A stretch of DNA of 63,877 nt, the filler included, from Octopus bimaculoides (taxonomy: Eukaryota): assembly GCF_001194135.2 (NCBI RefSeq). It is 6 parts of 6 records of this genome, joined end to end, with 100 filler letters (N's around TTAATTAATTAA, not from the genome) between each part and the next. Parts side by side here need not be neighbours in the genome. Positions count along the whole stretch, not along the records: positions 41,078 to 55,626 come from NC_069008.1; 5 more parts are not named here. The stretch is one strand, 5' to 3'. The notes beneath the pieces were generated by a model. It had not been told where the DNA came from and ran no database searches. It saw only the letters and a list, made by a program, of their open reading frames with translations. Position numbers and translations under genes: made by a program. Of the stretch, positions 13,870 to 55,626 are shown piece by piece (position 1 is the first letter of the stretch; each line of letters begins with the position of its first letter).

Positions 13870-14335
13870 TTGGCACCTGTGCCAGTGGAGCACTAACAGC
13901 ACCATCCGAGCATCATCATTGCCAGAGCAGCTGTCTGGATTCCGTGCCAGTGGCACGTAAAAACACCATTTGAGCGTGATTGTTACCAGCGTCGCCTTAC
14001 TGGCACTTGTGCCGGTGGCATGTGAAAAAACGTTCGAGTGAGGTTGTTGCCAGTGCCGTTGGACTGACTCCTGTGCAGGTGGCATGTGAAAAAGCACCAT
14101 TTTGTGCGTGGCCGTTGCCAGTACCGCCTGACTAGCCCTCGTGCTGGTGACATGTAAAAACACCCACTACACTCTCAGACTGGTTGGCGTTAGGAAGGGC
14201 ATCCAGCTGTAGAAACATTGCCAAATAAGATTGGAGCCTAGTGCAGCCAATGGTTCGCCAGTCCTCAGTCAAATCGTCCAACCCATGCTAGCATGGAAAG
14301 CGGATGTTAAACGATGATGATGATGATGATGATTA
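13870..14335 (+). mobile_element. SINE family C copy with an internal tandem array of ~60-bp hairpin units
   Basis: Repeated GTGCC(A/G)GTGGCAC/T-GT(A/G)AAAA-CACC units followed by the family C core and (GAT)n tail. Confidence 0.85.
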
Positions 14336-40470: not shown

Positions 40471-40664
40471 GTTTATTATTATTATGATTATTATTCTTAT
40501 TCTTATTATTATTATTAGAAGTAGATGTGGTACTATTGTTATTACCATAATCTATTTTCTAGTATTGCTAATATTTTTAATTTAACACTATCGTTACCTT
40601 TATTATCAGATTGTCGCATTGTTATCACTGCGGGTATTGAAGTACAATAATAGCCGTAATGATG

Positions 40665-40803
40665 ATGACAACGATGACGACGACGATGATGATGATGACG
40701 ATGATGATGGTGATGATGATGATGATGACGACGACGACGATGATGATGATGATGATGATGATGACGACGATGTTGATGATGATGATGATGATGATGATGA
40801 TTG
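40665..40803. repeat. (GAT/GAC)n tract
   Basis: Directly visible. Confidence 0.95.
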
Positions 40804-40977
40804 TAATAATACCCGCTCCTCATCCTGTCTTTACAGTATATATTTCTGCATATTTATTGCTTTCTATAAAGAGATGAGGCTTGACATCTGACCACGCTGT
40901 AAAAAGACAATAAAAATCAGATGCACCCACACTTATATTACTATCTACCTACATATATATATATATATATATATATA

Positions 40978-41077
40978 NNNNNNNNNNNNNNNNNNNNNNN
41001 NNNNNNNNNNNNNNNNNNNNNTTAATTAATTAANNNNNNNNNNNNNNNNNNNNNNNNNNNNNNNNNNNNNNNNNNNN
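40978..41077. other. Artificial contig/scaffold spacer
   Basis: 44 N + TTAATTAATTAA + 44 N. Confidence 0.9.
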
Positions 41078-42076
41078 CATCTCGGTTACGTCCCTTTACG
41101 CTCTCGGGTCTCCCTTGCCATTCTAGTTTTTCGAGTGAACGGCCAGGACACGAGGACGATGTTCAGAATCGTCGGTCGATACCGTTTTAAATCGTGCCCC
41201 ATCATGGCCGAGTAGAATGATTGAAATGCTCTTTGCCCTACACTTTATCCTTCACACACGCTCAAAAAGGTGTATTTTACGTGCCACCTGCACGGGAGCC
41301 AGTCCAGCGGCACTGGCAACAATCTCACTCGAATGTCTTTTCACGTGTCACCGGCACAACTGCAAGGAAGGCGACGCTGGGCACAGGTGCCTGACACTAC
41401 ATTCTGAGTTCAAATTATGCCAAGGTCAACTTTTCCTTTCATCCTTTCAGAGTTGATAAATTAAGTACCAGAGAAACACTGGGGTCGATGTAATCAACTC
41501 ACCCCTCCCCCAAAATGGCTACCCTTGTGGCAAAATTTGAAACCATTATTATTAAGTTGGAAAGCTGGCAGAATCTGCCAACAAAATGATTGACAGTATT
41601 TTATCCATCTTTACATTCTGTGTTCAAATTCTGCTGAGGTTGACTTTGGCATTCGTTCTTTTGGGGTCAATAGAATGAGTACCGGTTGAGTACTGGGGTT
41701 GGTATAATGAACTTAACTACTCCTGGGTATGAATATAAAAAACAATTTAAAAACTGCACCCTTCTGTCATGCCAGAGTGGCTGAGTAGACTCACCAAATC
41801 AGGATGATCTAATGCTCAAATTCCTGACCTCCACATCAGATTGTGGTTGGTGGAGAGATGCTGGGGTCTTCATTCTGCAGTGGACTCAACATGGGCAACC
41901 TAATCCAATGAATCTTAAGTCCCTTGGGCTTGTGACAGAAAAGAAAAAGAAAGATAAAACCTTATACCCAAGATCACATTTTCCATTCCTTCTTGCCTTC
42001 CCAAGGTGGCAGAATGTAATTTGCACAGCTATGTAGAGTCTCCCTCAGCCCATAAAACACACAATGAATGCCTTAA

Positions 42077-42274
42077 CCCTTTAGCATTCAGATGTTTCTG
42101 TCATATAACGCTTGTCTATTCACATTGATTTGAATTGGTTATGCATTAACTTGCAGCTTTGAGATTCCAGTGACATGATTGTAGGGTAAGTGTGAGAGGC
42201 TGGATCTGGTTGGTTTGAACATAAAACACGGAGATTTATTTTCGCTGGATACAGCCTGTTTAAATGCTAAAAGG
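42077..42274. mobile_element. piggyBac-type MITE (198 bp) with TTAA target-site duplication
   Basis: TTAA|CCCTTTAGCATT ... AATGCTAAAAGG|TTAA. Confidence 0.85.
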
Positions 42275-42331
42275 TTAAAGTTTCTATTGTTCTTACAAGT
42301 CTGTTTCTATGTCTATTTTTGGTAATTTCAG

Positions 42332-42428
42332 CTGTGAGCCTTGCCGAATTATTGCTCCAAAATTCGAAGAGATGAGCTTGCAATTCTCAAATGTTGTCTT
42401 CCTTAAGGTCGATGTTGAAGCTTTACCA
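42332..42428 (+). CDS. TXNL1: Thioredoxin-like protein 1, coding exon 2 (xCEPCRIIAPKFEEMSLQFSNVVFLKVDVEALP)
   Basis: tttcag| ... |gtaagt; 97 nt; thioredoxin CxxC, IAP.F and VFL.VDV motifs. Confidence 0.92.
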
Positions 42429-42534
42429 GTAAGTCTCTTTTTTTATCTACACCTCTCTCTCTCTCTCTCTCTCTCCTTCTCTGTCTATGTGAAGACACAC
42501 AAATACAAACCTTTGCACACACACACACACACAC

Positions 42535-42800
42535 ATCATCATCATCATCATCGTTTAACGTCCACTTTCCATGCTAGCATGGGTTGGACGATTTGGCTGA
42601 TGACTGGTGAAACCAGATGGCTACACCAGGCTCCAATCTGATCTGGCAGAGTTTCTACAGCTGGATGCCCTTCCTAACGCCAACCACTCCGAGAGTGTAG
42701 CGGGTGCTTTTACGTGCCACCGGCTAGAAGGCCAGTCAGGCAGTACTGGCAACGGCCACGCTCAAAATGGTGTATTTTATGTGCCACCCGCACAAGAGCC
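42535..42800 (-). mobile_element. SINE family C copy in TXNL1 intron 2
   Basis: Family C consensus. Confidence 0.85.
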
Positions 42801-42804
42801 AACA

Positions 42805-43070
42805 TATCTCCTCATCATTTTTACATCTGCGTCTCCACGCTTGCAGGAGTTGCAATGGACCTCTTTGCAACACTGCATTTTGGCCATTTCTTGCATTTGT
42901 TCCTTTGTCATCACTTGTGTGAGCTTCAACATCACAACATCAATTCCTACCATTTCTGGCACCGTCTCTTCCTTAGTCTTCCCTTTTCCACAGTTCCTTT
43001 CTATTCGGATCTCCCAACTCTTCTTTACCCATATCTTATCTTCCATACACATCACATGTCCTTACTAAAG
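42805..43070 (-). mobile_element. RTE-clade LINE 3' coding end (degraded)
   Basis: GHVMCMEDKIWVKKSWEIRIERNCGKGKTK... matches the RTE terminal GHVMRM....VKK.....EG..GRGRP.K; short (GAT)n tail. Confidence 0.7.
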
Positions 43071-43154
43071 ATGCCTTCAAACTTGCCCACCACAGGTGAT
43101 TGCTCTCAGTCCAACCCCCACCACATTGTTCATGCACACATCACATATAAAAGG

Positions 43155-43385
43155 CGGCGAGCTGCCAGAAACGTTAGCACGCCGGGCAAAATGCTTAGCG
43201 GTATTTCGTCTGTCTTTGCGTTCTGAGTTCAAATTCCGCCAAGGTCGACTTTGCCTTTCATCCTTTCGGGGTCGATGAAATAAGTACCAGTTACGCACTG
43301 GGGTCGATATAATCGACTTAATCTGTTTGTCTGTCTTTGTTTGTCCCCTCTGTGTGTAGCCCCTGGTGGGTTGTAAAGAAATAGC
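43155..43385 (+). mobile_element. Young, near-consensus family A SINE
   Basis: Intact CpGs; ATAGCACACATCACATATAAA/ATGCACACATCACATATAAA-like sequence on both flanks is a possible TSD. Confidence 0.9.
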
Positions 43386-43939
43386 ACACATCACATATAA
43401 AGTTAAAGGAGTTTCATTCTCGAGTCACACCATCTCACAAGGGCTGGTTTCATAGTGTATGTATTCCCCACCTGGCTAAGACACCAATCTGTCGCAAGAT
43501 TATTCCTTTTTGCCAGCTGAGTGGAATAGATCAACGTGAAATGAAGTGTTCTGAACAAGAACACCCCCACCTCATCCAGGAATCGAAACCCCAGCAGCAA
43601 AGTAGGACCCATTAGTTAATGTACTCCCAGATATACTATGTATGAATAACAGGCAGGATGATTACATAAGTCCACTGGATCAGGATTGACCTGGGATTAA
43701 ATAGCAACAAGGAAGGATACATTAGCTAATGTAGTCCTAGATATGCTATGTTTGAATAAAAGCCAGGATGGTCACGACTGGAGCATCTCTGATCATAGTT
43801 CTACTGGACCAGGACTGACTTCAGATTCATCAATGTCTCTAACTCGCAAGGCTTCCCAACGTCCTACTCCCTGCAGTCATCTTCCCCAACCGTCCTCGTA
43901 TTCCCTTAATTGTTGTTCTTTGTTTCCTTTATTGTCCAG

Positions 43940-44110
43940 GGCTTGGCAGAAGCCAACAAAGTCTTCTCCATGCCGACCTTCCAGTTTTTCCGGAACAAGG
44001 TGAAAATCGACGAGTTGAAGGGTTGTAACCCAAAGCCACTTAGGGAGAAGATCATGAAATACAGCAGCGGTGAGGATAGTATTGAGACTGACCCCAACGT
44101 GAAGGGCTAT
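43940..44110 (+). CDS. TXNL1: TXNL1 coding exon 3 (GLAEANKVFSMPTFQFFRNKVKIDELKG...DPNVKGY)
   Basis: gtccag| ... |gtaagt; 171 nt; cis-Pro motif MPTFQFFRNK. Confidence 0.95.
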
Positions 44111-44892
44111 GTAAGTAACAACAGGGGGCAAGTGTGCATCTTGTCCCCACTTTCTTTTTCGTGGGGGTGGCAGTTGACTTTTTTTTTTTGTTTTACCTAT
44201 TTTAGCTCTTGAATGTTTTATGTATTTATTATTATTATTGTTATTATTATTATTAGTAGTAGTAGTAGTAATAGTAGGCAATGAGCTGGCAGAATTGTTA
44301 GCGTACTGGACAAAATGCTTAGCAGTATTTTGCCTGTTGCTATGTTCTGAGTTCAAATTCCACCGAGGTCAACTTTGCCTTTCATCCTTTTGGGGGTCGA
44401 TATAATCGACTAGTCCCCACTCCACAAATTTGAGGCCTTGTGCCTCCAATAGAAAGGATTATTATTATTATTATTAGTAGTAGTAGTATTAGGTGGTGAG
44501 CTGGTAGAATTGTTAGCACGCTGGACAAAAAACTGAGCAGTACTTCACCCATCGCAGTGATGAAAGGCAAAATCACCAGGGTTGATTTTGCCTTTCATCT
44601 TTTTGGGGGTTGATTAAACAAATACCAGCTACACACTGGGGGTCAATGTAATCAACTTAATCCCTTCCCCAATATTTGAGGCCTTGTGCTTCTAGAAGAA
44701 AGGATTATTATTATTAGTAGTAGTAGTTGGCAGCGAGCTAAGATATTTGTACTCAGAGCCAGAGGCGGTTTCAGCCGGGTTGGTAACGAAAGGGTTAAAT
44801 GCTGATGAGCCATGTTGCCTGCTTTCTGTATGGTTTTGTTTCTGTTTTTCTTTCTTAAAAATATTTATCTGATTTTCTCATGTTTGTTCCAG

Positions 44893-45015
44893 ATGGATCT
44901 TTATTCATTAATCAACGAGACTTGCTCAGAATGCCTCAATGAGTCGGACACAAATCCGTTTCACAACTGTCTGTTGAAGAATGGAAGCTACCTAGAATCT
45001 GACTGTGATGAACAG
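44893..45015 (+). CDS. TXNL1: TXNL1 coding exon 4 (MDLYSLINETCSECLNESD...LESDCDEQ), start of PITH domain
   Basis: ttccag| ... |gtaaag; 123 nt; ECLNESD and LESDCDEQ motifs. Confidence 0.95.
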
Positions 45016-45254
45016 GTAAAGTGTTTCTTCGTTTCAGATGTATTCTGATGATGATTGTCTGTCCACTGCATGTCTAACTGTCCACAAAGCTTACAACGTA
45101 CTTGCAATGTCTGATGCCAGCTGCAGTGGCACTCAAAACAACCAGCAAAAGTATGTGACTTGCTACCCTTTTGTACCTTTTTTATTCTTTTATTTGTTGC
45201 AGTCATTTGACTGTGACCGTGCTGGAGCACTGCTTGTAGTTGAACAAATCGACG

Positions 45255-46403
45255 GTAATGGCGGTACTGGCAACGGCCACACTCAAATGGTGTTTTTTAT
45301 GTGCCACCTGCAACAACCTCACTCAAATGTTTTGTTCATGTGCCACCGGCACAAGTGCCAGTAAGGTGACGCTGGTAACGATCATGCTCAAATGGTGTTT
45401 TTTATGTGCCACCTGCAACAACCTCACTCAAATGTTTTGTTCACGTGCCACCGGCTCAAGTGCCAGTAAGGTGACGCTGGTAACAATCACGCTCAAATGG
45501 TGCTTTTTACGTGCCACCAGCATGGAAGCCAGACAGCTGCTCTGGCAGTGATCCTNNNNNNNNNNNNNNNNNNNNNNNNNNNNNNNNNNNNNNNNNNNNN
45601 NNNNNNNNNNNNNNNNNNNNNNNNNNNNNNNNNNNNNNNNNNNNNNNNNNNNNNNNNNNNNNNNNNNNNNNNNNNNNNNNNNNNNNNNNNNNNNNNNNNN
45701 NNNNNNNNNNNNNNNNNNNNNNNNNNNNNNNNNNNNNNNNNNNNNNNNNNNNNNNNNNNNNNNNNNNNNNNNNNNNNNNNNNNNNNNNNNNNNNNNNNNN
45801 NNNNNNNNNNNNNNNNNNNNNNNNNNNNNNNNNNNNNNNNNNNNNNNNNNNNNNNNNNNNNNNNNNNNNNNNNNNNNNNNNNNNNNNNNNNNNNNNNNNN
45901 NNNNNNNNNNNNNNNNNNNNNNNNNNNNNNNNNNNNNNNNNNNNNNNNNNNNNNNNNNNNNNNNNNNNNNNNNNNNNNNNNNNNNNNNNNNNNNNNNNNN
46001 NNNNNNNNNNNNNNNNNNNNNNNNNNNNNNNNNNNNNNNNNNNNNNNNNNNNNNNNNNNNNNNNNNNNNNNNNNNNNNNNNNNNNNNNNNNNNNNNNNNN
46101 NNNNNNNNNNNNNNNNNNNNNNNNNNNNNNNNNNNNNNNNNNNNNNNNNNNNNNNNNNNNNNNNNNNNNNNNNNNNNNNNNNNNNNNNNNNNNNNNNNNN
46201 NNNNNNNNNNNTGGCGGTACTGGCAACGGCCACACTCAAATGGTGTTTTTTATGTGCCACCTGCAACAACCTCACTCAAATGTTTTGTTCACGTGCCACC
46301 GGCTCAAGTGCCAGTAAGGTGACGCTGGTAACAATCACGCTCAAATGGTGCTTTTTACGTGCCACCAGCATGGAAGCCAGACAGCTGCTCTGGCAGTGAT
46401 CCT
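45255..46403 (-). repeat. Family C-derived 105-bp VNTR, duplicated on both sides of an N-gap
   Basis: 45259-45555 and 46212-46403 share the same start and end; the left copy has one extra 105-bp unit. Confidence 0.85.
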
Positions 46404-46534
46404 TTTTAGGGTTGATTAAATAAGTACCAGCTACACACTGGTGTCGATGTAATCAACTTAATTCCCTCACTCGAGCTGCCCTTGTGCCAAAAATTTGAAT
46501 TCATTATTATTGTTGTTGTTTTTTGTTGTTTCAG

Positions 46535-46601
46535 CTTATCCTATTTGTGAGTTTCAACCAACCTGTCCGGTTACACTCGTTCAAATTGATGGGACCATTA
46601 G
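46535..46601 (+). CDS. TXNL1: TXNL1 coding exon 5 (LILFVSFNQPVRLHSFKLMGPL)
   Basis: tttcag| ... |gtaagt; 67 nt; FNQPV.L.S motif. Confidence 0.93.
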
Positions 46602-47321
46602 GTAAGTAATAGACTTGAAATTCCCCTCTCAGCTGTTGGGTATTTACATATTCATTTTGTTTACTACCTCTCTCTCTCTCTCTCTTGGTTTCTACTTTCC
46701 TAACACCAACCCCTACAAGAGTGCAGTGGGTGCTTTTTAGGTGCCACCGGCACGAGTGGCAGTTACGAAACACCGGCATCAGCCACGACTATGATCTCAC
46801 CTGGCTCGACAGGTCCTCTCAAGCATGGTATATTCCTAAGGGTCTCGGACACTTCTCACTGCCTCCAACTTTTAAAGGGTGCTTTTAACATGCCACCAGC
46901 ATGGCTGCTAGTTACACAACACTGGCATCAGCCATGACTACGATTTCACTTGGCTTGATGGGTCTTCTTCTCAAGCATGGCATATTGCCAAAGGTCTCGG
47001 TCACTTTGCTTCCATGAGGCCCAACGCTCAAAGATCACGCTTCATCACCTCCTCCTATGTCTACCTCTTCTACAGGTTCCCTCCATAGTTATCTAATTAC
47101 AAAAATGTTTTTTTTAAACATTGAATGACTAGTGGGGACCAGTTGAATAAAATAGAAATCAAAAGGGTCTATCGAAAAAAAAAAGGGTTGGGAGCCACTG
47201 GTCAAGTGACTCTGGTAAAAAAATATTGTTGTTGGTCACTTACTGGTCTTGTACCAAAATTTGAAAGCATTGTTTAGGTCGTTGTTGTTGGTAATATTGT
47301 TATTTTGTATATTATATTCAG

Positions 47322-47494
47322 AAAACGGGCCCAAAACTATAAAACTGTTTATAAACCAGCCACGGACCCTTGACTTTGACCAGGCTGAAGGCATGGAACC
47401 TGTCCAGTCCCTGAGTATAGAAGCATCAGACTTAGAAAATTGTACGACCATTCCACTGCGCTATGTCAAGTTCCAGAATGTTCAGAACATCACA
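47322..47494 (+). CDS. TXNL1: TXNL1 coding exon 6 (NGPKTIKLFINQPRTLDFDQAE...IPLRYVKFQNVQNIT)
   Basis: attcag| ... |gtaagt; 173 nt; GPK.IK.FIN and PLRYVKFQNV motifs. Confidence 0.95.
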
Positions 47495-47576
47495 GTAAGT
47501 ATACAGATATACATACATATCACAAAAAAAATGCACCCAGTACACTGTAAAGTGGCTGGTATTACACCAGCACACA

Positions 47577-47774
47577 CACGAGAGGACGTGCTGAAAAGTT
47601 TCTGGCTTTGGGTAAAAGAAAATACAGGAGAATCAGTTAATTATGATTTTATTTAACGTATTCCCCTGCTCAGATTCACACACTTATTGCAGTAAAAGAA
47701 CTCAGAAAGGTTAGGCCTCCGACCAGGCCTTTCGTAATATCCTTAAAGCCAGGAACTTTTCACTACCTCCTTGT
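47577..47774. mobile_element. Tc1/mariner-type MITE in TXNL1 intron 6
   Basis: Homologous to 22594-22806; TIR-like ends. Confidence 0.7.
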
Positions 47775-47845
47775 AGTAGTGCTACATTGTTCATTTTCGG
47801 TAAATAACTTTGTGATTTGTTTTCATTCTTTCTTTCTCTCCACAG

Positions 47846-47950
47846 ATATTCATGAAAGACAATCAACAGGGAATGGACACAACACAACTAGATTACTTGT
47901 GTTTTATAGGAACCCCTGTATCTTCAACAGATATGTCTGATTTCAAAAGG
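47846..47950 (+). CDS. TXNL1: TXNL1 coding exon 7 (IFMKDNQQGMDTTQLDYLCFIGTPVSSTDMSDFKR)
   Basis: ccacag| ... |gtacgc; 105 nt; T.M.DFKR motif. Confidence 0.95.
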
Positions 47951-48485
47951 GTACGCCAATTTATTTCCCCCCGTTTTCTTGTTTCTCTCATTCCCAGTCG
48001 GTTCTCTGTAACTGCTGGATGGAAAGCATTAAATCTCTGCAGATAAATCAATCAGTTAATGATCTGTTAATTAATGCTGGTTGTCAGTAAAATGTAACAG
48101 CCATCATCATCAGTGTCCTACACTATCATTGTTACTACCACCACCACCACCACCACGATAGTCATCATCATCATCATCATCACCACCACCATAGTCATCA
48201 TCACCATGCTTTGCTTTCCCTGTCCCCAACCCTTGTCTATTTCCGACGAAGTCTGTTAATGAATCTGTCAGGTTTGTGACAGTCCTAAGACACATACACA
48301 CAGATGTGCATGCACACACACAGAGATATGCATGCACACACGGACATAGTCCCAGATATGTACACCTGCATGCATGCACGCATACACTTACAAACACTCA
48401 GACATTTAACACACACACACATAAACATGCACATGAACACACACACACACATCTGTATTTAACACTTTATTCTTTTTTGTTTCAG

Positions 48486-48515
48486 GTTGCTGGTAAGAAA
48501 GGTGAAAGCCATTAG
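48486..48515 (+). CDS. TXNL1: TXNL1 terminal coding exon 8 (VAGKKGESH*)
   Basis: tttcag|GTT...CAT TAG; the conserved GKKGESH C-terminus; AATAAA at 48528-48533. Confidence 0.95.
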   Translation, partial: VAGKKGESH

Positions 48516-49582
48516 AAGAGGAAGGAAAATAAAAGAAAAAAAAACGCAATGCTCCAGCTGATATAGAACAATGTCCCCCCCCCCCNNNNNNNNNNNNNNN
48601 NNNNNNNNNNNNNNNNNNNNNNNNNNNNNNNNNNNNNNNNNNNNNNNNNNNNNNNNNNNNNNNNNNNNNNNNNNNNNNNNNNNNNNNNNNNTGGTCAAAA
48701 AAAAATGAGTGTCAGCTGACGAAGGGGAACTCTTTCCTTTTTTTTCTTTTTGGTTTTCTATTTGTTTATATCTCCTGATCCCACTCTCCCACTGTCTTAG
48801 TGTGTGCAGTGGTAAGTTTACAGCCCCTTATTCCTTGTCCCCCCCTTTCTCTCTAAACCCACTCCTAACTCTCCTCTTTGTTTCTCGTCTGGGCTTCTTC
48901 CCCTCACCCCCAAGTCTCTTCCTCCTCTGTTGTCACTTCTTTTTCTCCATTTCTTCCTCCTCTGAACACTTCTAACACTTCAATTTTTTTTTTTATTAAT
49001 CCCACAGAGAAAACATCAAACAAAAGGGTTTCTTAGTATTTTAAAATATACATGCATACGTACACATACACACACACACACACACACACTCTCATACATA
49101 CAAATATAGATATTTATATATAAATGTACACACAAATTTTTTCAATGAAAAGGGTTGGCAGTGTCTTCAAAGTTTTACCTTGCTTGCCTTCATCAGACTG
49201 ATGGAGGCAAGCAAATTAAAACTTCATTGTAAAAATTAATATATACTCAGCTAAAAAGGAATTTAGAACAACTTCAATTTAAAACTAGATTGTTTTTACA
49301 CACACACACACCTGCATACATACACGTCTGTGTGTTTATAAATGTAATTATACATGCATGAAACACACTTCAACCATTCTGTTTGTTGATATTTTATGAC
49401 CATAAAATAATAAGTTTAGTAATAATGATGGTGACAAGTCAAAGAATAACATTGACTATTGATAATGTTGATAATAACTCTAATTATAATCATCTTAATA
49501 ATAATTTTTGTATGAGTTGGTTATTTTTCTTTTTTTGTTTTTATATTTGTAATTTTTCATGTTTGTGTGCTGATGCCAGTAC

Positions 49583-49830
49583 CGCTTAGTGGCGTAGTGG
49601 TTAAGAGCGCGGGCTACTAACCCCAAGATTCCGCTTTCGATTCCAAGCAGTGATCTGAACAATAATGACATTGAAAAATACCTTAGGAATGAGAACCCAG
49701 GTTCGGAATTTCCCCAAGACCCCTGATGAAGGCTGGAGGGTATATCAGCTGAAACGTTCTGTTACTAACAAACAAGATGAGGACAAATATTCGTCAAATG
49801 TAAATAATTCCTCTCCTCTTAAATACAGAA
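49583..49830 (+). mobile_element. tRNA-headed SINE carrying a hammerhead-like motif
   Basis: Head TGGCGTAGTGGTTAAGAGCGCGGG...TTCGATTCC (A/B boxes); CTGATGA-A-GGCTG-GAGGGTATAT-CAGCT-GAAA-CGTT at 49723-49758. Confidence 0.75.
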
Positions 49831-50149
49831 TTATGCATACACACACACACATATATATATATATGTGTGTGTGAAGGTGTGTGGCTTAATGGTTAAGCAG
49901 TTACCATAGCAACAGTTCCTATACTCTTTGATCAGATCATCTATATGTCTTTCTTACCTTATACTTATTTCAATCATTGTACTGCAGCCATTCTGGAGCA
50001 CCACCTTAAAGGGTTTGGTCAAAGAAATTGACTGGTACTTATTTTATTAGTCTCTTTTTTTTGCCGAACTGCTAAGTGACTAGACTGTAAACAAACCAAC
50101 ACCGCTTGTTAAGCAGTTGTAGGTAACAAACACAAAAACATTCACACAT

Positions 50150-50480
50150 ATATCTTTTATTTATTTCATTCATTAGACAGTGGCCATGCTGGGGCATCAT
50201 CTTGAAAGATTTTTAGTCAAATGGATCAACCCCAGTACTTATTCTTTCTCTTTTGCTGAACTGCTAAGTCACAGGATGTAAACACACCAACACCAGTTGC
50301 CAAGCAGTAATGGGGAACACACACAAACAACGGACTTCTTTCAGTTTGTTTTAAGAAATCCATCGAAAAGGTTTCTGTTGGTCCAAGACTTTAGTAGAAA
50401 ACCCCTGCCGAAAGTGCCACACAGTGGGACTGAACCCAGAACCATGTGGTCGGGAAGCAAGTTTCTTATCACAGTCATAC
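50150..50480 (-). mobile_element. SINE family B copy
   Basis: Family B consensus. Confidence 0.8.
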
Positions 50481-50713
50481 CTCAGTTATTCTAATGTCTG
50501 TTCTTCCACGCTCTCCTGCATCAGATGAGATTCTTTGAGGTAGATTTACTCCGGCCTCTGGCCAGATACACTTCCTGTTTGTTGTTGTTACCCAAGGTCG
50601 ATCCTGATCGAGTAGACCTATGGTCTACTCGATCCATCTGTGACCATCCCCAGACCATACTATCTTTTATTCAGAGGATATATGTGTTTGAGAGAGAAAG
50701 TCCTGACCCAGGG

Positions 50714-50938
50714 TTAAATAACAATCACCATGACTGTGCCTATATATGTATACAACAACAGCAAATAGCTAAAGGTTTGTTTATTAAGCTTTGTTGTTTC
50801 TGAGCTGTGGTCCCTGGTTTTAAGCAGTTGCAAAGCTTTTTTCTGGTCCCTGTTCAGGGTCGTTATCTGTCTTCTTCGTTGCCAGTACAGGGAGATGTAT
50901 GACAAAGGAGTAGTTTCCTTCATAGTGGCAAATGTCAT
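50714..50938 (-). pseudogene. Frame-shifted remnant of the polycystin channel-entry region (basic helix + TM6/S1-like)
   Basis: Alternate frame TPLSYISLYWQRRRQ...KLNKQTFSYLLLLYTYIGTVMVIVI* overlaps the last ~40 codons of the main ORF and resembles the PKD1L YxP...RxxR...K...YLLFL..L..I segment. Confidence 0.5.
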
Positions 50939-53900
50939 GGATGCGCTCCATGAAGTCCTTGTCTTTGATGTCGACCATGGAGATATAGAAGACTTCTATA
51001 TTCAGTCTCATCCTCAAAAGCACGACGACTGCTGTCTTCAACAAGATCTCAAACGGTTGCTCCAGGAAGATTGACTGCACCAGGGAGGTGAAGAATGCCA
51101 CAGTCCAGTCGATACTCCTCTCGTAGCCATATGTGAGACCATACAGCATGATAAAGTAGGTAGAAATGAGACAGAAGGTCAAAGTTATCGTCCAGGATAT
51201 ATATACAAACCACCAAGGCAGAAGTCCATGTGGCGCCAAGGGGTTGCTGGACTTAGATTCCTTCTTTGTATCCAAATCCTCGTTATCGTCCTTGTCATGA
51301 TTCAGTGAAGCTGAAGAATGTTTTCCATCCTTCTTGTCTTTTTGACTGTCCTTTTCATAGTCATCAGAAGCATTTGTTTTTGGCAGCTGGGCAACATAGC
51401 CGTCGTTAGTATTTGCCGACTGCACCAAATAAACAGAATCCGTTTCCCGTTCCTTCTTTAGTTCTGCCGTGCTATCTTGCTGTTTGTCCTCTGCAGTTGT
51501 GCCTTTCTTCGGTTTCACTTTGGCATCGGCACCAGAGGCTCTTGAACTGCTACTTTCATCTCCAATAAGACTTTGTAGAATATTATAAACGTTTTGGCTG
51601 AGGCTTGGACGGACATGGACCGAAAACGAATAGCTGCCAGTCTTATTTTCTGTATTTGGCTTCCTCTCGTGGTCTTCGGCCATCATCTTTCTCTCTTCTC
51701 CCCCCTCCTCCTTAATCTTTGGTTTCAATTTCTCCTCTTTCTTGTGAACAATAAAGAAGTCATGGAATCTCGGTTTCACTTGTATAAATAGCTGAGTTAG
51801 GATCAGACCGATTGGGATAATCACCAGAGACGTCTGCAGACCGATTATAAGGGGTGTGACAGATACCTTCACAGAACCAACTGTCACCTGTTTCTTGGGG
51901 TCATCTGTAGGGACCCCATAAAACATGATGTTACCTAGCATGAGTGCCAGCAACAGAGCAAAGGTGCAGGTGAGCCGTTGTGCACGAGTGAAGGAACTCG
52001 GGGGTGTAAAAATGTAGCTAAACCATTGGTGAGTTCTTCGAAAACAATTTAAAACTTCCAATTGGAAAATTTTCCACTTAAGAGAGTTTTGCTGAATCGT
52101 ATCCAAGGGTTTTAGGAAGGCATGTGTCAAGAAAAGGCCCCTGTTTGGTGACATCCAGTCTGACAGTATAAAAAGCCACAAATCTTCTGTCTGTAAATCC
52201 TGTATCGTTACGTAATCAAGCTTCCAGTCTGGGCTTGAACCAGAATTGTCATGCCAGATTAAGATCTGTTCTATATCACCAATACCATTCTCAGTTGTAA
52301 GCAGAAACCAATTTGCATCACCCGACTGGAAGCACTGCTTGTGTGAGTCGCGGAGATATACTATGGAGCTGTGGCCCCTAGCCCCCATTAGGACTAGATA
52401 AACCCTTGCTGTGGTACCGGAACCGAGCCACCATTTTGTCTTGACGCAGACAAGGTAGATGTAACCAGTTAAGTTGTTGCTGAGTACAGTCAATGAAGTG
52501 GATTCCCTGTCTCGCCGGTCCAGGCGCTTCGTCAGATGGAGAAGTCCAATGTAGATGACCCATGCTAGGAGCACAACCAAGAACATTATTGGGTTTGTGA
52601 AGACCTCTGCAAACCGATATGCATCATCGATCGGATGCACAAAGTTGGGTGGAACAAAGAACCTGGCTGACAGCACGTTGCTCTGTTCACAGGTACATTC
52701 AACCACCTGGTTGAACTCAACAGAACTGTTACTCAGTTTACAGTTATTCTGACTCCATACATGGTTATTGTCATCCCAGTTGAGACACAACTTGCTCATA
52801 AATCCAAAACGCATTGGTATTTCCACGTGTTCTACAGATTCTTCGCGTCCCATATGACTTTCGTTGCCGTTTGTTTTGTTCATTCGAATCTTGACCGTTT
52901 CGTCAGTCATGGCGTAATACTTGAATGGTTTGACCATGACAAAATAGACTTTTTCCTCGACCGAACCGACAGGTACCAGCACTGTGTAGTTGACATAGTC
53001 CATTTGGGAAACCCTGCTTTCCGACAACCTCTGGAAATTTCCCAACACAAACTGCTTGTACGACAGCTTCTGTGTGAGATGCACAACCACATCAATCTGA
53101 AACGGTCCTTCATCCAGGTTAATAAATATGTAATGGTTACTGGATTGGGACACGTTTAATGTGATCATCGGGATGGAGAAATTCTGAGAATAACTTGGAT
53201 AAAGAAAGTTCCCTTCACGACGCAAATCAAATTTTAGAATGAATTTTTTCCATTGTAGGCCAACCGGAACCTTGGGGCCAGATGCACGGAAGTATTTTGG
53301 ATTAATATCAACATGATTAGGAGTGCTTTTGTAGGCCCTGACTGAGAGTACTGGATAATTTGGCTTTATTGATTCTGCGAGAGCATAAGGATTATCATAA
53401 ATTAAAAATGTGCTCAAAAACGCTGCTCTATCCTCAGATGTCCTGTTTTCAGGTTGGCATTTAAACTTGACAGAGATGTCTGTGTTACCAACATGCAGTG
53501 TGGAAGAGACAGGATAGTCGCAGACGCTATTTTGAAAAATAAGGGCCATTGTTACTTCCAGCACAGAAGTTGGTGACCGAATTTCTACAGGAATTGACGT
53601 TCGATGCCCAAACCAGACAGCTACACTGATGCGGTCGATGACAGAAAGAAAATTATCTACTGATTTAACAGATATTTGTATATTGTTTTTCTTCTCTTCA
53701 GCAGCCATTTTGAACCTTGGTTCAACTTCATAGCTGCTCAGCATGTGACTTATACCGGACACAAGGTATTGAGCATCACTGTCGAATGCCTTCATAGACA
53801 TTGCTGTAACCTGGTCCTGCAACTGAGCTGCAAAATTAGAATAAATTTCGCTGCAGATAAGTTTACTGGTGGAATTAAATTCTCGTTTATTCTTTGTGAT

Positions 53901-55160
53901 TTCATCCATCAATGTTGACAGGTCTGACATTTTCTGCGCCTTGTAAACCTGTAGCCTGTGGACAACCCGCAAAAGCTTATGGCGGAGAGCAATAAAGTTC
54001 TTAAGCCCTTCTTCTTTCTCATTTTCTGTATAAAAGGAATAGGCTTTGTGGAAATGCTGGCTGTGCTTGTTAACTTCACTGGTTAGAAGCAACAAAGAAT
54101 TTTTAGCTATCTTTGCATCCTCAATCAACATCACTCTATCAATCTCATCACTTAGTTCTCTGAATGAAATTGGTGGTTTCACTGTGTACCTGAATGTTGA
54201 CAGTATTTCCATACATGTCTTGCCATTGTTGACACTGTACACATACATATTCATGTCAACTTGATAGTTTGGTGTGGCTGGCAACGTGAAACTAGCATCA
54301 AACGATTCCCCAAGCTTTTCATCCTGTTTTATGTAAGACACCAAACTCTTACACGACAAACTGTAGAAAAAATTACCCTTTTGGCTGAAAAGAGAGAGGT
54401 CTTTACAAGAAAGCCTGTACAAGGTCGTCGTTTGGAAGCCTGACTGTGGCTTCATTTCACAGCGTTTGTCAAACAGGTAGGGGAGAATTTGTATCTGTAT
54501 GTTGTACCTGTACCGGTTCACATCATCTTTTTCCAATGGTTGAGCGCTGCCTAAATTCATGGTCACTTCAAGGGAAATTAAGTTTGGAAAGCCATCCTTA
54601 ACAAGCTGCGATGACAAGAACAGGTATTGTGTGTCTGTGCCTGTAGCAACGATGATGCTAGCACCTTTCATATTACGAGCATCAAAGCAATGTATTTTTT
54701 GTTTTAGGTCACGAAAATTACATTCAAAAAAATCATCAACGCCCAGGAATTCATATTGACCTGTCTTGCAGTTCAGTTGGTAACGAACGTTGCCTTTCTC
54801 ACCCCCTAAACTTAAGCAGTTCTTTGCACACTTTGCTGTGAGTTTTACAGACTCAGTTCCTGAAGCCACAATGGTTAAATACTTTGACTTTGGAAGGATG
54901 CAGTCTGTTCGGATGTAGTCACCCCCCATCAAATCAACGGATTTTGCTTCAAGCAAGCGGCTCATGAATTCTCCGTCCAGGCAACTCAATTCTATGTTCA
55001 TTGTGCTTTTCGAAGCTTTGCTTTGAACGGTATCGGAAACTTTGAAGTCGTCGTAAGGAATGAATTTTTGGGCAATGACACAGAGAATTATTCGTTGACC
55101 TAACAACAACAATAGCAAAATCATATTGGAAACAACAAGACAACATTTACAGATTTCCAT
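50820..55160 (-). CDS. Intronless polycystin-1-like (PKD1L/PKDREJ-like) membrane protein, 1446 aa: signal peptide, REJ-like segment, GAIN/GPS, TM1, PLAT, TM2-5; no channel domain
   Basis: Uninterrupted 4341-nt ORF. N-terminal hydrophobic stretch; RCEMKPQSGFQTTTLYRLSC (REJ-type C.v.P..G..l.T.F...C); CLNWD...WSQNNC...CTC...FFVPPN (GPS); YLVCVKTKWWLGSGTTARV...WHDNSGSSPDWKLDYV (PLAT); HQWFS...SSFTRAQRLTC; LLPWWFVYISW; EQPFEILL. Confidence 0.92.
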   Translation of the reverse strand: MEICKCCLVVSNMILLLLLLGQRIILCVIAQKFIPYDDFKVSDTVQSKASKSTMNIELSCLDGEFMSRLLEAKSVDLMGGDYIRTDCILPKSKYLTIVASGTESVKLTAKCAKNCLSLGGEKGNVRYQLNCKTGQYEFLGVDDFFECNFRDLKQKIHCFDARNMKGASIIVATGTDTQYLFLSSQLVKDGFPNLISLEVTMNLGSAQPLEKDDVNRYRYNIQIQILPYLFDKRCEMKPQSGFQTTTLYRLSCKDLSLFSQKGNFFYSLSCKSLVSYIKQDEKLGESFDASFTLPATPNYQVDMNMYVYSVNNGKTCMEILSTFRYTVKPPISFRELSDEIDRVMLIEDAKIAKNSLLLLTSEVNKHSQHFHKAYSFYTENEKEEGLKNFIALRHKLLRVVHRLQVYKAQKMSDLSTLMDEITKNKREFNSTSKLICSEIYSNFAAQLQDQVTAMSMKAFDSDAQYLVSGISHMLSSYEVEPRFKMAAEEKKNNIQISVKSVDNFLSVIDRISVAVWFGHRTSIPVEIRSPTSVLEVTMALIFQNSVCDYPVSSTLHVGNTDISVKFKCQPENRTSEDRAAFLSTFLIYDNPYALAESIKPNYPVLSVRAYKSTPNHVDINPKYFRASGPKVPVGLQWKKFILKFDLRREGNFLYPSYSQNFSIPMITLNVSQSSNHYIFINLDEGPFQIDVVVHLTQKLSYKQFVLGNFQRLSESRVSQMDYVNYTVLVPVGSVEEKVYFVMVKPFKYYAMTDETVKIRMNKTNGNESHMGREESVEHVEIPMRFGFMSKLCLNWDDNNHVWSQNNCKLSNSSVEFNQVVECTCEQSNVLSARFFVPPNFVHPIDDAYRFAEVFTNPIMFLVVLLAWVIYIGLLHLTKRLDRRDRESTSLTVLSNNLTGYIYLVCVKTKWWLGSGTTARVYLVLMGARGHSSIVYLRDSHKQCFQSGDANWFLLTTENGIGDIEQILIWHDNSGSSPDWKLDYVTIQDLQTEDLWLFILSDWMSPNRGLFLTHAFLKPLDTIQQNSLKWKIFQLEVLNCFRRTHQWFSYIFTPPSSFTRAQRLTCTFALLLALMLGNIMFYGVPTDDPKKQVTVGSVKVSVTPLIIGLQTSLVIIPIGLILTQLFIQVKPRFHDFFIVHKKEEKLKPKIKEEGGEERKMMAEDHERKPNTENKTGSYSFSVHVRPSLSQNVYNILQSLIGDESSSSRASGADAKVKPKKGTTAEDKQQDSTAELKKERETDSVYLVQSANTNDGYVAQLPKTNASDDYEKDSQKDKKDGKHSSASLNHDKDDNEDLDTKKESKSSNPLAPHGLLPWWFVYISWTITLTFCLISTYFIMLYGLTYGYERSIDWTVAFFTSLVQSIFLEQPFEILLKTAVVVLLRMRLNIEVFYISMVDIKDKDFMERIHDICHYEGNYSFVIHLPVLATKKTDNDPEQGPEKSFATA

Positions 55161-55582
55161 ATTGTTGAAAAATAATTTATAACAAGAAAATATCTCAACA
55201 ACATGATGATGATGATGATGGTGAGGATGAAATACAGCTGATACTGCAAGTGGAAAACATTTAAAAAAAAAACACTAAGAAGACAGGTGAACAACACCAA
55301 AAACAAATGTTACATATACAGATCAATGAAATAAAATTGTTTTTAAATAAAGAAAAAAAGAGGCAGAAGGATTAAATGCGACCAAAATGGTTATTTTTGT
55401 TGTGCCATGGCATGGAATGATCAAATTTGTCTTATGATGTCACAGCTAATTGTTGAGAATAAATCTGACAATATTTCGGTTGGCCTTTAAATTTGCTGTT
55501 GGAAAACACACAGTTTAATACAAGTATATAAAAATTATGTGTGTGTATATGCATATCTGTGTATGTACGTGTATATATGATG

Positions 55583-55626
<44 letters not shown>

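What the first reader, a model, noticed from the sequence alone, without database searches (positions are those of the whole stretch)
50820..55160. Single-exon 1446-aa polycystin-1/REJ-like receptor
Seen: signal peptide, ~800-aa ectodomain with a short REJ-like motif, GPS, PLAT and 5 TM, all without introns in an intron-rich genome where neighbouring TXNL1 exons are under 175 nt. Known: PKD1-family genes are usually highly multi-exonic; the intronless exception, mammalian PKDREJ, is sperm-expressed, and sea-urchin REJ proteins act in the acrosome reaction. Inference: an independently retroposed polycystin-like receptor, possibly for gamete or sensory signalling. The N-terminal ~230 aa (Cys-containing, beta-rich looking) match nothing I recognise.
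Basis: partly seen in the sequence, partly recalled or inferred. Interest (0 to 1): 0.75.

Follow-up and report, generated by a model that had tools for sequence, protein, structure and literature searches.

The report
Intronless channel-less polycystin-1-like octopus receptor
This is a real, transcribed and selectively maintained single-exon octopus gene for a polycystin-1/REJ-family surface receptor that has lost the whole ion-channel half of the protein; it is an old, derived variant of a known family, not a new kind of gene.

Summary
The 1446-aa ORF (50820-55160, minus strand) is real. One 5.1-kb RNA contig is colinear with the genome across the whole ORF and about 400 nt on each side, while neighbouring TXNL1 is correctly spliced in the same run.

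Three corrections:
- **N-terminus:** aa 105-332 are a divergent C-terminal half of a REJ domain (HHalign 93%). aa ~333-828 look like a GAIN domain.
- **Truncation:** the protein stops in the TM5-TM6 linker. There is no TM6-11 channel/TOP half and no decayed relic downstream, so it differs from 11-TM PKDREJ.
- **GPS site:** the HL|T/S cleavage triad is replaced (QSN; KSN in O. vulgaris).

dN/dS against O. vulgaris is 0.13 across TM1-PLAT-TM3 and 0.6-0.7 in the ectodomain. A 34%-identical positional orthologue, also next to TXNL1, is likewise intronless and channel-less, so the state is old and not Octopus-specific. The nearest relatives are multi-exon, mostly 11-TM molluscan PKD1L2-like genes with shared intron positions. 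That favours ancient retroposition plus truncation. Expression is 12-30x enriched in one sample whose tissue is hidden, so a gamete or sensory role is untested.

The parts
50820..55160 (-). Complete single-exon CDS, 1446 codons plus stop
   Evidence: ORF list. Colinear 5140-nt RNA contig in run X1. Start and stop conserved in the O. vulgaris ORF.
55161..55561 (-). Transcribed 5' leader, colinear with the genome. Contains a (CAT)n run. The contig stops at a TA/CA microsatellite, so the true TSS is unknown.
50422..50819 (-). 3' UTR of at least ~400 nt. AATAAA motifs lie soon after the stop. The contig stops where a high-copy SINE-like repeat begins.
55071..55160 (-). Signal peptide (aa 1-30; hydrophobic core aa 3-21)
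   Evidence: Hydropathy. Conserved MEICKCC start in O. vulgaris.
55097..55110 (-). Polypyrimidine-AG candidate splice acceptor inside codon 21. It is used by the O. vulgaris RefSeq isoform X1 model. No junction was seen in the RNA laid here.
54849..55070 (-). aa 31-104: Cys-containing N-terminal segment. Conserved in P0004 (C60, C87) and still unassigned.
   Evidence: Alignment A1. AF2 pLDDT <50.
54165..54848 (-). aa 105-332: divergent C-terminal half of a REJ domain, with motifs C111-x-x-N-C115 and R-C234-EMKPQSGFQTTTLYRLS-C252
   Evidence: HHalign probability 93%, E=3.4e-7 against a REJ profile built from 70 relatives. Pfam REJ itself does not score.
53601..54164 (-). aa ~333-520: long-helix bundle, interpreted as GAIN subdomain A
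   Evidence: AF2 pLDDT 70-89. The only Foldseek hits at E<=1e-3 are GAIN domains 8oek and 8vti_A. Matches the post-REJ region of Antedon PKD1L2.
52677..53600 (-). aa ~521-828: beta-rich region ending in the GPS scaffold (aa 792-828), interpreted as GAIN subdomain B. The cleavage triad is replaced by Q826-S827-N828 (nt 52677-52685).
   Evidence: dN/dS hotspot at aa ~441-600.
52500..52676 (-). aa 829-887: conserved stalk (VLSARFFVPPNFVHPIDD) and TM1
   Evidence: PDB alignment to PC1. dN/dS 0.06-0.14. AF2 helix.
52146..52457 (-). aa 902-1005: cytoplasmic PLAT/LH2 domain
   Evidence: Pfam PF01477, 63.8 bits. AF2 pLDDT >90. Foldseek matches lipoxygenase PLAT and PC1.
51783..51986 (-). aa 1059-1126: TM2 and TM3
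51234..51764 (-). aa 1133-1309: K/E/D/S-rich disordered cytoplasmic loop. Much shorter in P0004.
   Evidence: AF2 pLDDT <50. Alignment A1. dN/dS 0.41.
51015..51209 (-). aa 1318-1382: TM4 and TM5 (LPWWFVYI... motif)
   Evidence: phmmer matches 109 PKD1-like proteins down to E~1e-24. AF2 pLDDT 81-95.
50823..51002 (-). aa 1387-1446: short cytoplasmic tail. The first ~25-30 aa are homologous to the TM5-TM6 linker of 11-TM relatives. The motif ERIHDICHYEGNYSFVI is shared only with P0004. The protein ends about where TM6 would begin.
   Evidence: dN/dS 0.28.
47846..48512 (+). Last two coding exons of the convergent neighbour TXNL1 (47846-47952 and 48468-48512). This is the synteny anchor shared with O. 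vulgaris (L001) and the P0004 locus (L002).

Best explanation
The ORF is a functional, intronless gene for a channel-less member of the polycystin-1/REJ (PKD1) family.

Architecture, from N to C terminus: signal peptide; short Cys-containing segment; divergent half-REJ module; GAIN-like domain whose GPS scaffold has lost the HL|T/S autoproteolysis triad in Octopus; conserved stalk; TM1; cytoplasmic PLAT domain; TM2-3; disordered charged loop; TM4-5; and a 60-aa conserved tail. This corresponds to polycystin-1 up to the end of its N-terminal five-helix TM domain. The TM6-11 channel-like half, the TOP domain and the C-terminal tail are absent.

Origin (inferred): a multi-exon, 11-TM molluscan PKD1L2-like gene gave rise to a processed, intron-free copy. 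That copy landed tail-to-tail next to TXNL1 in an ancestor shared by Octopus and the distant species carrying P0004. It either derived from a short transcript or was truncated soon after in the TM5-TM6 linker.

Mechanism (inferred): without TM6-11 it cannot contribute a pore subunit to a TRPP tetramer. It most likely acts as a surface receptor or adhesion-type sensor. The fast-evolving ectodomain would bind an extracellular partner. The strongly conserved stalk-TM1-PLAT-TM2-5 module would transmit or scaffold the signal at the membrane, with PLAT as the lipid/Ca2+/protein-binding platform. In Octopus this would happen without GPS cleavage, so without an exposed tethered stalk. The target tissue is one in which it reaches the transcript level of a housekeeping gene.
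For: Shown:
- ORF and unspliced transcript, with spliced TXNL1 in the same runs as an RNA control.
- PLAT and PC1 homology.
- Confident AF2 model of TM1-PLAT-TM2-5.
- REJ remnant.
- GAIN-like fold: the only significant Foldseek hits are the ADGRB2 and ADGRL3 GAIN domains.
- Triad QSN/KSN in Octopus, against HLS in P0004 and HLT in all other relatives inspected.
- No channel domain in the protein. About 90 single-core relatives have one.
- No channel-coding remnant downstream in the window, in O. vulgaris or in L002. The positive control scores E~1e-92.
- Stop and tail conserved in three species.
- dN/dS 0.13 for TM1-PLAT-TM3, 0.21 for TM4-5, 0.28 for the tail, and 0.59-0.72 for the ectodomain.
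- P0004 is one uninterrupted 4002-bp ORF with TXNL1's last exons convergent downstream, as in the window.
- Octopus+P0004 clade at 100% bootstrap. Its neighbour group is entirely molluscan and mostly 11-TM.
- Pecten and Mya relatives span 38-55 kb with at least 15-17 exons. Intron positions shared at about octopus aa 886/887, 979 and 1313/1316 are all absent here.
- Transcript depth relative to TXNL1 is ~1.0 in X1 and 0.03-0.08 in X2, X3 and X5.
Against: - No poly(A) relic or target-site duplication was found, as expected for an old event, so retroposition is inferred only from the simultaneous absence of ancestral introns.
- The parental 11-TM gene in cephalopods was not identified.
- The molluscan sister grouping has only 26% bootstrap support.
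- The organism of P0004 is unknown (unnamed ENA assembly), so 'old' is dated only by sequence distance (0.87, against 0.08 within Octopus).
- The O. vulgaris RefSeq isoform X1 adds two upstream coding exons, so an alternative spliced 5' end may exist.
- The ectodomain model is low-confidence (mean pLDDT 52).
- Every statement about ligand binding, signalling and lack of cleavage is inference from sequence.
- The tissue of the enriched sample is unknown.
Confidence: 0.6

Rival explanations
1. Same gene, different function. It acts as a non-pore auxiliary subunit or regulator of a TRPP/PKD2-like channel in sperm. This would resemble the sea-urchin REJ proteins that act in the acrosome reaction, and is the reader's gamete hypothesis.
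For: - Channel-less REJ proteins with 1-2 TM exist in sea-urchin sperm (PMC1934368).
- The fast-evolving ectodomain, with a dN/dS hotspot of 1.1-1.3 at aa ~441-600, is typical of gamete-recognition proteins.
- Expression is strongly enriched in a single sample.
- Cephalopods have a TRPP channel gene (PMC13402157).
Against: - The parts of PC1 that contact PC2 in the solved complexes match only TM1-TM5 and PLAT of this protein; TM6-11 is missing. That PC2 also binds the PC1 C-terminal coiled coil is established knowledge, and that region is missing too.
- Tissue labels are coded, so testis expression is unproven.
- Low-level transcripts occur in several other samples.
- The pairwise dN/dS hotspot has no statistical test behind it.
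Confidence: 0.2
2. The intronless state arose without retroposition of an mRNA. Possible routes are stepwise intron loss or gene conversion by partial cDNAs in situ, with the channel half lost separately by a later truncating mutation and decay.
For: - No poly(A) tract, target-site duplications or identified parent gene.
- Retrocopies are usually 5'-truncated, not 3'-truncated.
- The tail up to about aa 1409-1415 is still homologous to the TM5-TM6 linker, which fits a simple premature stop.
Against: - All ancestral intron positions in the region are gone at once in both distant orthologues.
- There is no trace of channel exons downstream in three loci.
- The gene sits tail-to-tail only 2.3 kb from TXNL1, which fits an inserted compact copy.
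Confidence: 0.2
3. The ORF is only a giant exon of a larger conventional 11-TM PKD1-like gene, as exon 15 is in human PKD1, and the gene model is incomplete.
For: - The O. vulgaris RefSeq model has extra 5' exons.
- Many database PKD1-like models that seem to end after TM5 are truncated models. Pecten P0017, for example, has channel-HMM hits just past its annotated end.
Against: - RNA contigs run through the stop codon into about 400 nt of 3' UTR, with no splice junction out of the ORF.
- The stop codon and tail are conserved in three species.
- There is no channel-like coding potential between the stop and TXNL1 in any of the three loci, while the control scores E~1e-92.
Confidence: 0.03
4. 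It is a decaying retropseudogene, or a transcribed but non-functional copy.
For: It is intronless and truncated relative to the family, and is barely detectable in three deep 2026 RNA runs.
Against: - The 1446-codon frame is intact here. The 1451-codon frame is intact in O. vulgaris at dS 0.22, and the 1333-codon frame is intact in P0004.
- dN/dS is 0.07-0.15 across TM1-PLAT.
- Transcript depth equals TXNL1's in run X1.
Confidence: 0.02

Closest known systems
Polycystin-1 (PKD1) N-terminal half: GAIN/GPS - TM1 - PLAT - TM2-5 ('NTMD' in the PC1/PC2 cryo-EM structures 6A70, 8Z6B and others)
   Same: - aa 829-1126 align to PC1 at E=6e-31, and TM4-5 are homologous across the family.
- The stalk motif FVPP, the PLAT position and the topology are the same.
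- The AF2 model matches PC1 chains.
   Different: - It stops in the TM5-TM6 linker. There is no TM6-11, TOP/polycystin domain or C-terminal tail.
- There are no PKD repeats, LRR, WSC or lectin modules, and only half a REJ domain.
- The GPS triad is lost.
- The CDS is intronless.
Molluscan PKD1L2-like proteins (e.g. Mytilus XP_052099063, Mya XP_052792159, Haliotis XP_046574496, Gigantopelta XP_041369822)
   Same: Nearest sequence relatives: 36-40% identity across GPS-TM3, and the all-molluscan neighbour group in the tree.
   Different: They have REJ, a canonical HLT GPS, PKD_channel and Polycystin_dom, and genes of at least 15-17 exons spanning 38-55 kb. The octopus gene has none of these.
Sea-urchin channel-less REJ proteins (SpREJ1, SpREJ2, SpREJ7-9)
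   Same: PKD1-family members with REJ or partial REJ, GPS and PLAT, but fewer than 11 TM (1, 2 or 6) and no channel domain. Some are sperm receptors (PMC1934368).
   Different: - The sea-urchin genes have 20-52 exons.
- None is reported with this 5-TM layout.
- No specific orthology was shown here.
Mammalian PKDREJ
   Same: An intronless PKD1-family gene. It is described as testis-restricted in PMC1934368.
   Different: - PKDREJ has 11 TM with a channel-like domain and a full REJ domain.
- The octopus gene groups with molluscan PKD1L2-like genes, so the two became intronless independently.
- Tissue specificity is not established here.
Adhesion GPCR GAIN domains, including naturally uncleaved ones (ADGRB2/BAI2, PDB 8oek)
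   Same: Helical subdomain followed by a beta-sandwich with the GPS scaffold directly before TM1. The best fold hit is an uncleaved GAIN.
   Different: It is followed by a 5-TM/PLAT module rather than a 7-TM GPCR core. Fold-match TM-scores are low (0.35-0.41) because the model is weak.

Membership tests
PKD1 (polycystin-1 / REJ) family | PLAT/LH2 domain in the first cytoplasmic loop, directly after TM1 | tested here: met
   Pfam PF01477, 63.8 bits against a cutoff of 23, aa 902-1005. AF2 pLDDT >90.
PKD1 (polycystin-1 / REJ) family | GPS motif / GAIN domain immediately upstream of TM1 | tested here: met
   The Cys/Trp scaffold is conserved. Orthologue P0004 passes Pfam GPS (27.9 bits against 22.5). 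Fold hits are GAIN domains. The octopus sequence itself does not score with Pfam GPS.
PKD1 (polycystin-1 / REJ) family | HL|T/S autoproteolysis triad at the GPS | tested here: not met
   The triad is Q826-S827-N828 here and K-S-N in O. vulgaris. It is HLS in P0004 and HLT in the eight other relatives inspected. Cleavage itself cannot be tested in silico.
PKD1 (polycystin-1 / REJ) family | REJ domain in the ectodomain | tested here: inconclusive
   Pfam REJ gives no hit at E<=10. HHalign of the 3-sequence profile against a REJ profile gives 93% probability, E=3.4e-7, for the C-terminal half only.
PKD1 (polycystin-1 / REJ) family | TM1-TM5 helical module homologous to PC1 | tested here: met
   PDB phmmer E=6e-31 for TM1-3. 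TM4-5 match 109 family members. AF2 and Foldseek match PC1 chains.
PKD1 (polycystin-1 / REJ) family, canonical 11-TM form (PKD1, PKD1L1-3, PKDREJ) | TM6-11 channel-like domain with TOP/polycystin domain (PF08016, PF20519) | tested here: not met
   No Pfam hit. No phmmer or HMM hit in the protein or downstream DNA, with a positive control at E~1e-92.
PKD1 (polycystin-1 / REJ) family, canonical 11-TM form | C-terminal cytoplasmic tail after TM11 (coiled coil / G-protein-activating segment) | tested here: not met
   The protein ends 60 aa after TM5. No coiled-coil prediction was run on the short tail.
Mammalian PKDREJ-type gene | Intronless coding sequence | tested here: met
   Colinear RNA contig. 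Uninterrupted ORFs in three species.
Mammalian PKDREJ-type gene | Orthology or close relationship to PKDREJ | tested here: not met
   The gene groups with molluscan PKD1L2-like proteins. The grouping has weak bootstrap support but is taxonomically coherent.
Mammalian PKDREJ-type gene | Testis/sperm-restricted expression | not testable with these tools
   Run and tissue names are coded. Only a 12-30x enrichment in one sample was shown.
Retrogene (processed gene copy) | Lacks the introns present at conserved positions in its relatives | tested here: met
   Introns shared by the Pecten and Mya relatives at about octopus aa 886/887, 979 and 1313/1316 are absent. Those relatives have at least 15-17 exons.
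Retrogene (processed gene copy) | Poly(A) remnant and target-site duplications; identifiable multi-exon parent at another locus | tested here: inconclusive
   No poly(A) tract follows the window's 3' UTR. There is an A-rich tract after the P0004 stop, but in a 32%-GC locus. No systematic search for target-site duplications was run. The parent was not identified. The event is too old for these marks to be expected.
Adhesion GPCR | GAIN domain followed by a 7-TM class-B2 core | tested here: not met
   There are five TM with an intervening PLAT domain, homologous to PC1 rather than to GPCRs.

The most novel reading that the evidence does not exclude
The GAIN-TM1-PLAT-TM2-5 half of polycystin-1 is an autonomous receptor unit. 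On this reading, a cephalopod lineage has kept it without any channel half, as an intronless gene, over a divergence as deep as 34% protein identity. In Octopus it has further become a non-cleavable GAIN receptor, so it would signal without a tethered agonist and without being a TRPP pore subunit. It may be deployed in one specialised tissue for gamete or contact chemosensory recognition.
Probability: 0.3. Interest if true: 0.55.

Novelty: new variant of a known kind. Interest (0 to 1): 0.38.

Why it matters
Whether polycystin-1 is mainly a receptor (an atypical GAIN/stalk-activated GPCR-like protein) or mainly a channel subunit is still debated. This gene is a naturally occurring protein made only of the receptor half, kept under strong purifying selection across a deep divergence. 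That suggests the receptor half can function on its own. It also offers a compact, intronless 4.3-kb construct for testing this.

Two orthologues differ in the GPS triad (HLS against QSN/KSN). That gives a natural cleavable/uncleavable pair.

For cephalopod biology it is a candidate tissue-enriched surface receptor with a fast-evolving ectodomain. For annotation, it shows that the 'PKD1L2-like' label in RefSeq hides a protein that cannot be a TRPP-type channel subunit.

Tried and rejected
- **Word-index protein search.** It was too insensitive for this protein. The ectodomain query returned only the self hit, and the family-profile query missed P0004.
- **Bacterial-type promoter/terminator scan and tRNA scan.** Neither was informative.
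- **Read laying on TXNL1.** One call was lost to a sequence filter at 48290-48330.
- **First tree script.** It timed out and was rewritten.
- **Other 'channel-less' models as evidence for a widespread 5-TM class.** Pecten P0017 and Gigantopelta P0024 were considered. P0017 was rejected because channel-HMM hits lie just beyond or overlapping its last exon in another frame. P0024 lacks even TM4-5 and was not pursued.
- **Octopus tail as read-through of the ancestral intron near aa ~1399-1408.** Not supported. Homology to the TM5-TM6 linker of 11-TM relatives continues to about aa 1409-1415.
- **Ectodomain AF2 model.** It is too weak (mean pLDDT 52) to assign a fold to aa 31-330, so fold matches were used only for the helical/GAIN part.
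- **Literature searches for cephalopod polycystins.** They found only TRP-channel surveys, which would not include a channel-less protein.

Full report
**Observation.** The piece 41078-55626 contains one outstanding ORF, 50820..55160 on the minus strand, of 1446 codons. Every other ORF is 170 aa or shorter, apart from artefacts that run through an N-gap. Upstream of the ATG the frame is closed 38 codons earlier and has no other ATG. Pfam finds a PLAT domain at aa 902-1005 (63.8 bits). A search of all PDB sequences aligns aa 829-1126 to human polycystin-1 TM1-PLAT-TM2-TM3 at E=6e-31. Hydropathy gives a signal peptide and five TM segments.

**Is it really one exon, and is it expressed?** Public RNA run X1 holds a single 5140-nt contig (k-mer depth ~50). 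It is colinear with the genome from 50422 to 55561 with no gap and no mismatch, so it covers the whole ORF and about 400 nt on each side. In the same runs the neighbouring gene TXNL1 is properly spliced. The GT..AG intron 47495-47845 is removed and intron depth is 0, so these runs are RNA, not genomic contamination. Depth relative to TXNL1 is ~1.0 in X1 and 0.03-0.08 in X2, X3 and X5. Three deep 2026 runs contain almost none. Expression is therefore strongly sample-enriched, but run and tissue names are coded and I could not learn which tissue X1 is. One caveat concerns the 5' end. The O. vulgaris RefSeq model (P0002, 'kidney disease 1-like 2 isoform X1') adds two small exons 7.6 and 12.7 kb upstream, spliced into a polypyrimidine-AG acceptor equivalent to window ~55100. 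The MEICKCC start and its upstream leader are nevertheless conserved in O. vulgaris, and no such junction appears in the RNA laid here.

**Where the protein ends.** Canonical PKD1-family proteins, including PKDREJ, have 11 TM, and TM6-11 plus the TOP domain form the channel-like half. I tested for that half in three ways:
- Pfam finds no PKD_channel or Polycystin_dom.
- A channel-domain query detects the domain in about 90 of the single-core relatives, but not in the octopus protein, its O. vulgaris orthologue or P0004.
- A channel HMM finds nothing in the 2.3-7.6 kb between the stop codon and TXNL1 in the window, in O. vulgaris (L001) or in L002 (E>=0.15). The Mya control scores E~1e-92.

The stop codon and the 60-aa tail are conserved in all three species. 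The first ~25-30 tail residues are homologous to the TM5-TM6 linker of 11-TM relatives, so the protein ends about where TM6 would begin. RNA contigs run through the stop into the 3' UTR. The 'giant exon of a bigger gene' reading is therefore very unlikely.

**The ectodomain.** Pfam finds nothing in aa 1-878 even at E<=10. A profile of the three orthologues, compared by HHalign with a REJ profile built from 70 relatives, aligns aa 105-332 to the C-terminal half of the REJ domain (probability 93%, E=3.4e-7). The match includes the C-x-x-N-C and C-x3-P-x2-G-...-T-x-[FY]-x3-C signatures. Only aa 31-104 remain unassigned.

AlphaFold2 on a 9-sequence alignment is weak overall (mean pLDDT 52). It does give a confident long-helix bundle for aa ~330-520, followed by a beta-rich region that ends in the GPS. 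The only two Foldseek PDB matches at E<=1e-3 are adhesion-GPCR GAIN domains: ADGRB2 in the uncleaved state and ADGRL3. Together with the intact GPS Cys/Trp scaffold, this supports a GAIN domain.

The autoproteolysis triad is gone. PC1 H-L-T3049 aligns with Q826-S827-N828, and O. vulgaris has K-S-N. P0004 keeps H-L-S, and the eight other relatives inspected keep H-L-T. Loss of GPS cleavage in Octopus is an inference from sequence.

**The membrane module.** With a 30-sequence alignment, AlphaFold2 models TM1, PLAT and TM2-TM5 at pLDDT 80-97. It leaves the K/E/D/S-rich loop (aa 1133-1309) disordered. In the tail it predicts only a short helix over DFMERIHDICHYEG. Foldseek returns lipoxygenase PLAT domains and polycystin-1 chains from PC1/PC2 complexes (26-28% identity over ~280-300 columns).

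**Selection.** Against the O. vulgaris ORF (dS=0.22), Nei-Gojobori dN/dS is 0.41 overall. By region:

| Region | dN/dS |
|---|---|
| GPS | 0.14 |
| TM1-PLAT-TM3 | 0.13 |
| TM4-5 | 0.21 |
| Tail | 0.28 |
| Cytoplasmic loop | 0.41 |
| Ectodomain | 0.59-0.72 |

Sliding windows show a local maximum of 1.1-1.3 at aa ~441-600. This is pairwise only and has no significance test. The gene is clearly not a pseudogene.

**Relatives and age.** An exhaustive HMMER scan of 1.84 billion representative proteins gave 3181 hits. Only one protein outside Octopus shares the whole ectodomain, TM1-5 and the tail: P0004 (1333 aa, 34% identity, E=3e-188), from an unnamed ENA assembly. Its gene occupies exactly 4002 bp, so it is also one uninterrupted ORF. 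The last two TXNL1 exons lie convergently downstream of it, exactly as in the window and in O. vulgaris. P0004 is therefore a positional orthologue.

In a neighbour-joining tree of the conserved core (94 taxa), Octopus+P0004 form a 100%-supported clade. Its neighbour group is supported at only 26% but consists entirely of molluscan PKD1L2-like proteins (Mytilus, Potamilus, Mya, Pecten, Ylistrum, Haliotis, Gigantopelta), nearly all with channel domains. Core distance is 0.08 within Octopus, 0.87 to P0004 and 1.1-1.2 to bivalves. P0004 therefore most likely comes from a distantly related cephalopod. This is an inference.

The Pecten and Mya relatives span 38 and 55 kb with at least 15 and 17 coding exons. 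They share intron positions at about octopus aa 886/887, 979 and 1313/1316, none of which exists in the octopus or P0004 genes.

**Interpretation.** The most economical history is this. A processed, intron-free copy of a multi-exon 11-TM molluscan PKD1L2-like gene was inserted next to TXNL1 in a common ancestor of Octopus and the P0004 species. It was either copied from a short transcript or truncated soon afterwards in the TM5-TM6 linker. The event is independent of mammalian PKDREJ, but it is ancient, not Octopus-specific. No poly(A) relic, target-site duplication or parent gene was found, so stepwise intron loss cannot be excluded.

Functionally, a protein without TM6-11 cannot take the pore-subunit position that PC1 occupies in the PC1/PC2 complex. 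The selection pattern shows a fast-evolving ectodomain and a highly constrained stalk-TM1-PLAT-TM2-5 module and tail. That points to a surface receptor whose membrane-proximal module is the conserved effector. Sea-urchin SpREJ proteins with 0, 1, 2 or 6 TM (PMC1934368) are the closest precedent. A role in gamete recognition or in sensory cells is compatible with the data but untested.

**Verdict.** The gene is a new variant of a known family: intronless, channel-less, GPS-triad-dead and 5-TM. It is already present in RefSeq under a generic PKD1L2-like name. Interest is moderate. It is a natural 'receptor-half-only' polycystin-1, useful for asking what that half does alone, but it is not a new kind of system.

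Noticed in passing
L001 16567-16740 (O. vulgaris locus): A decayed fragment of this same gene (aa 264-321, 88% identity, with an internal stop) lies about 6 kb upstream of the real ORF, inside the 'intron' of RefSeq isoform X1. It is a partial tandem duplicate or pseudogene piece. The X1 exon at L001 14954-15076 may belong to the same debris.
   Followed up: partly
window 55200-55235 and 55562-55626: A (CAT)n run that would read as poly-His sits just upstream of the ATG. It is conserved and longer in O. vulgaris. A (TA)n/(CA)n microsatellite at the piece edge stops the RNA contig, so the true transcription start is unknown.
   Followed up: partly
window 50188-50563, 47581-47654, 48136-48200: High-copy SINE-like repeats with RNA contig depths in the thousands. 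Raw RNA reads show mostly A>G differences at 50413, 50421 and 50438. These could be other repeat copies or A-to-I editing.
   Followed up: no
window ~45550-46235: An assembly gap (N run) inside a TXNL1 intron is flanked on both sides by near-identical sequence, since the same ORF text appears before and after the gap. This suggests a collapsed tandem repeat.
   Followed up: no
L003 ~40510-41340 (Pecten maximus, XP_033756196 locus): This RefSeq 'PKD1L2' model looks channel-less (1179 aa). However, channel-HMM hits (E~1e-12) lie overlapping and just past its last exon in a different frame. The model's 3' end is probably mis-predicted, or it is a frameshifted isoform of an 11-TM gene.
   Followed up: partly
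window 53361-53840 (aa ~441-600): A local dN/dS of 1.1-1.3 between the two Octopus species lies at the junction of the helical and beta parts of the GAIN-like domain. This could be positive or relaxed selection. The estimate is pairwise only.
   Followed up: partly
L002 ~14140-14175: An A-rich tract (A13 G A10 G AAAG...) lies about 140 nt after the P0004 stop codon. It could be a relic poly(A) of a retrocopy, but the locus is only 32% GC, so it may be chance.
   Followed up: no
window 42309-48512 (+): TXNL1 (thioredoxin + PITH) lies convergent to the receptor gene and ends 2.3 kb from its stop. This tail-to-tail arrangement is conserved in O. vulgaris and in the distant P0004 locus.
   Followed up: yes
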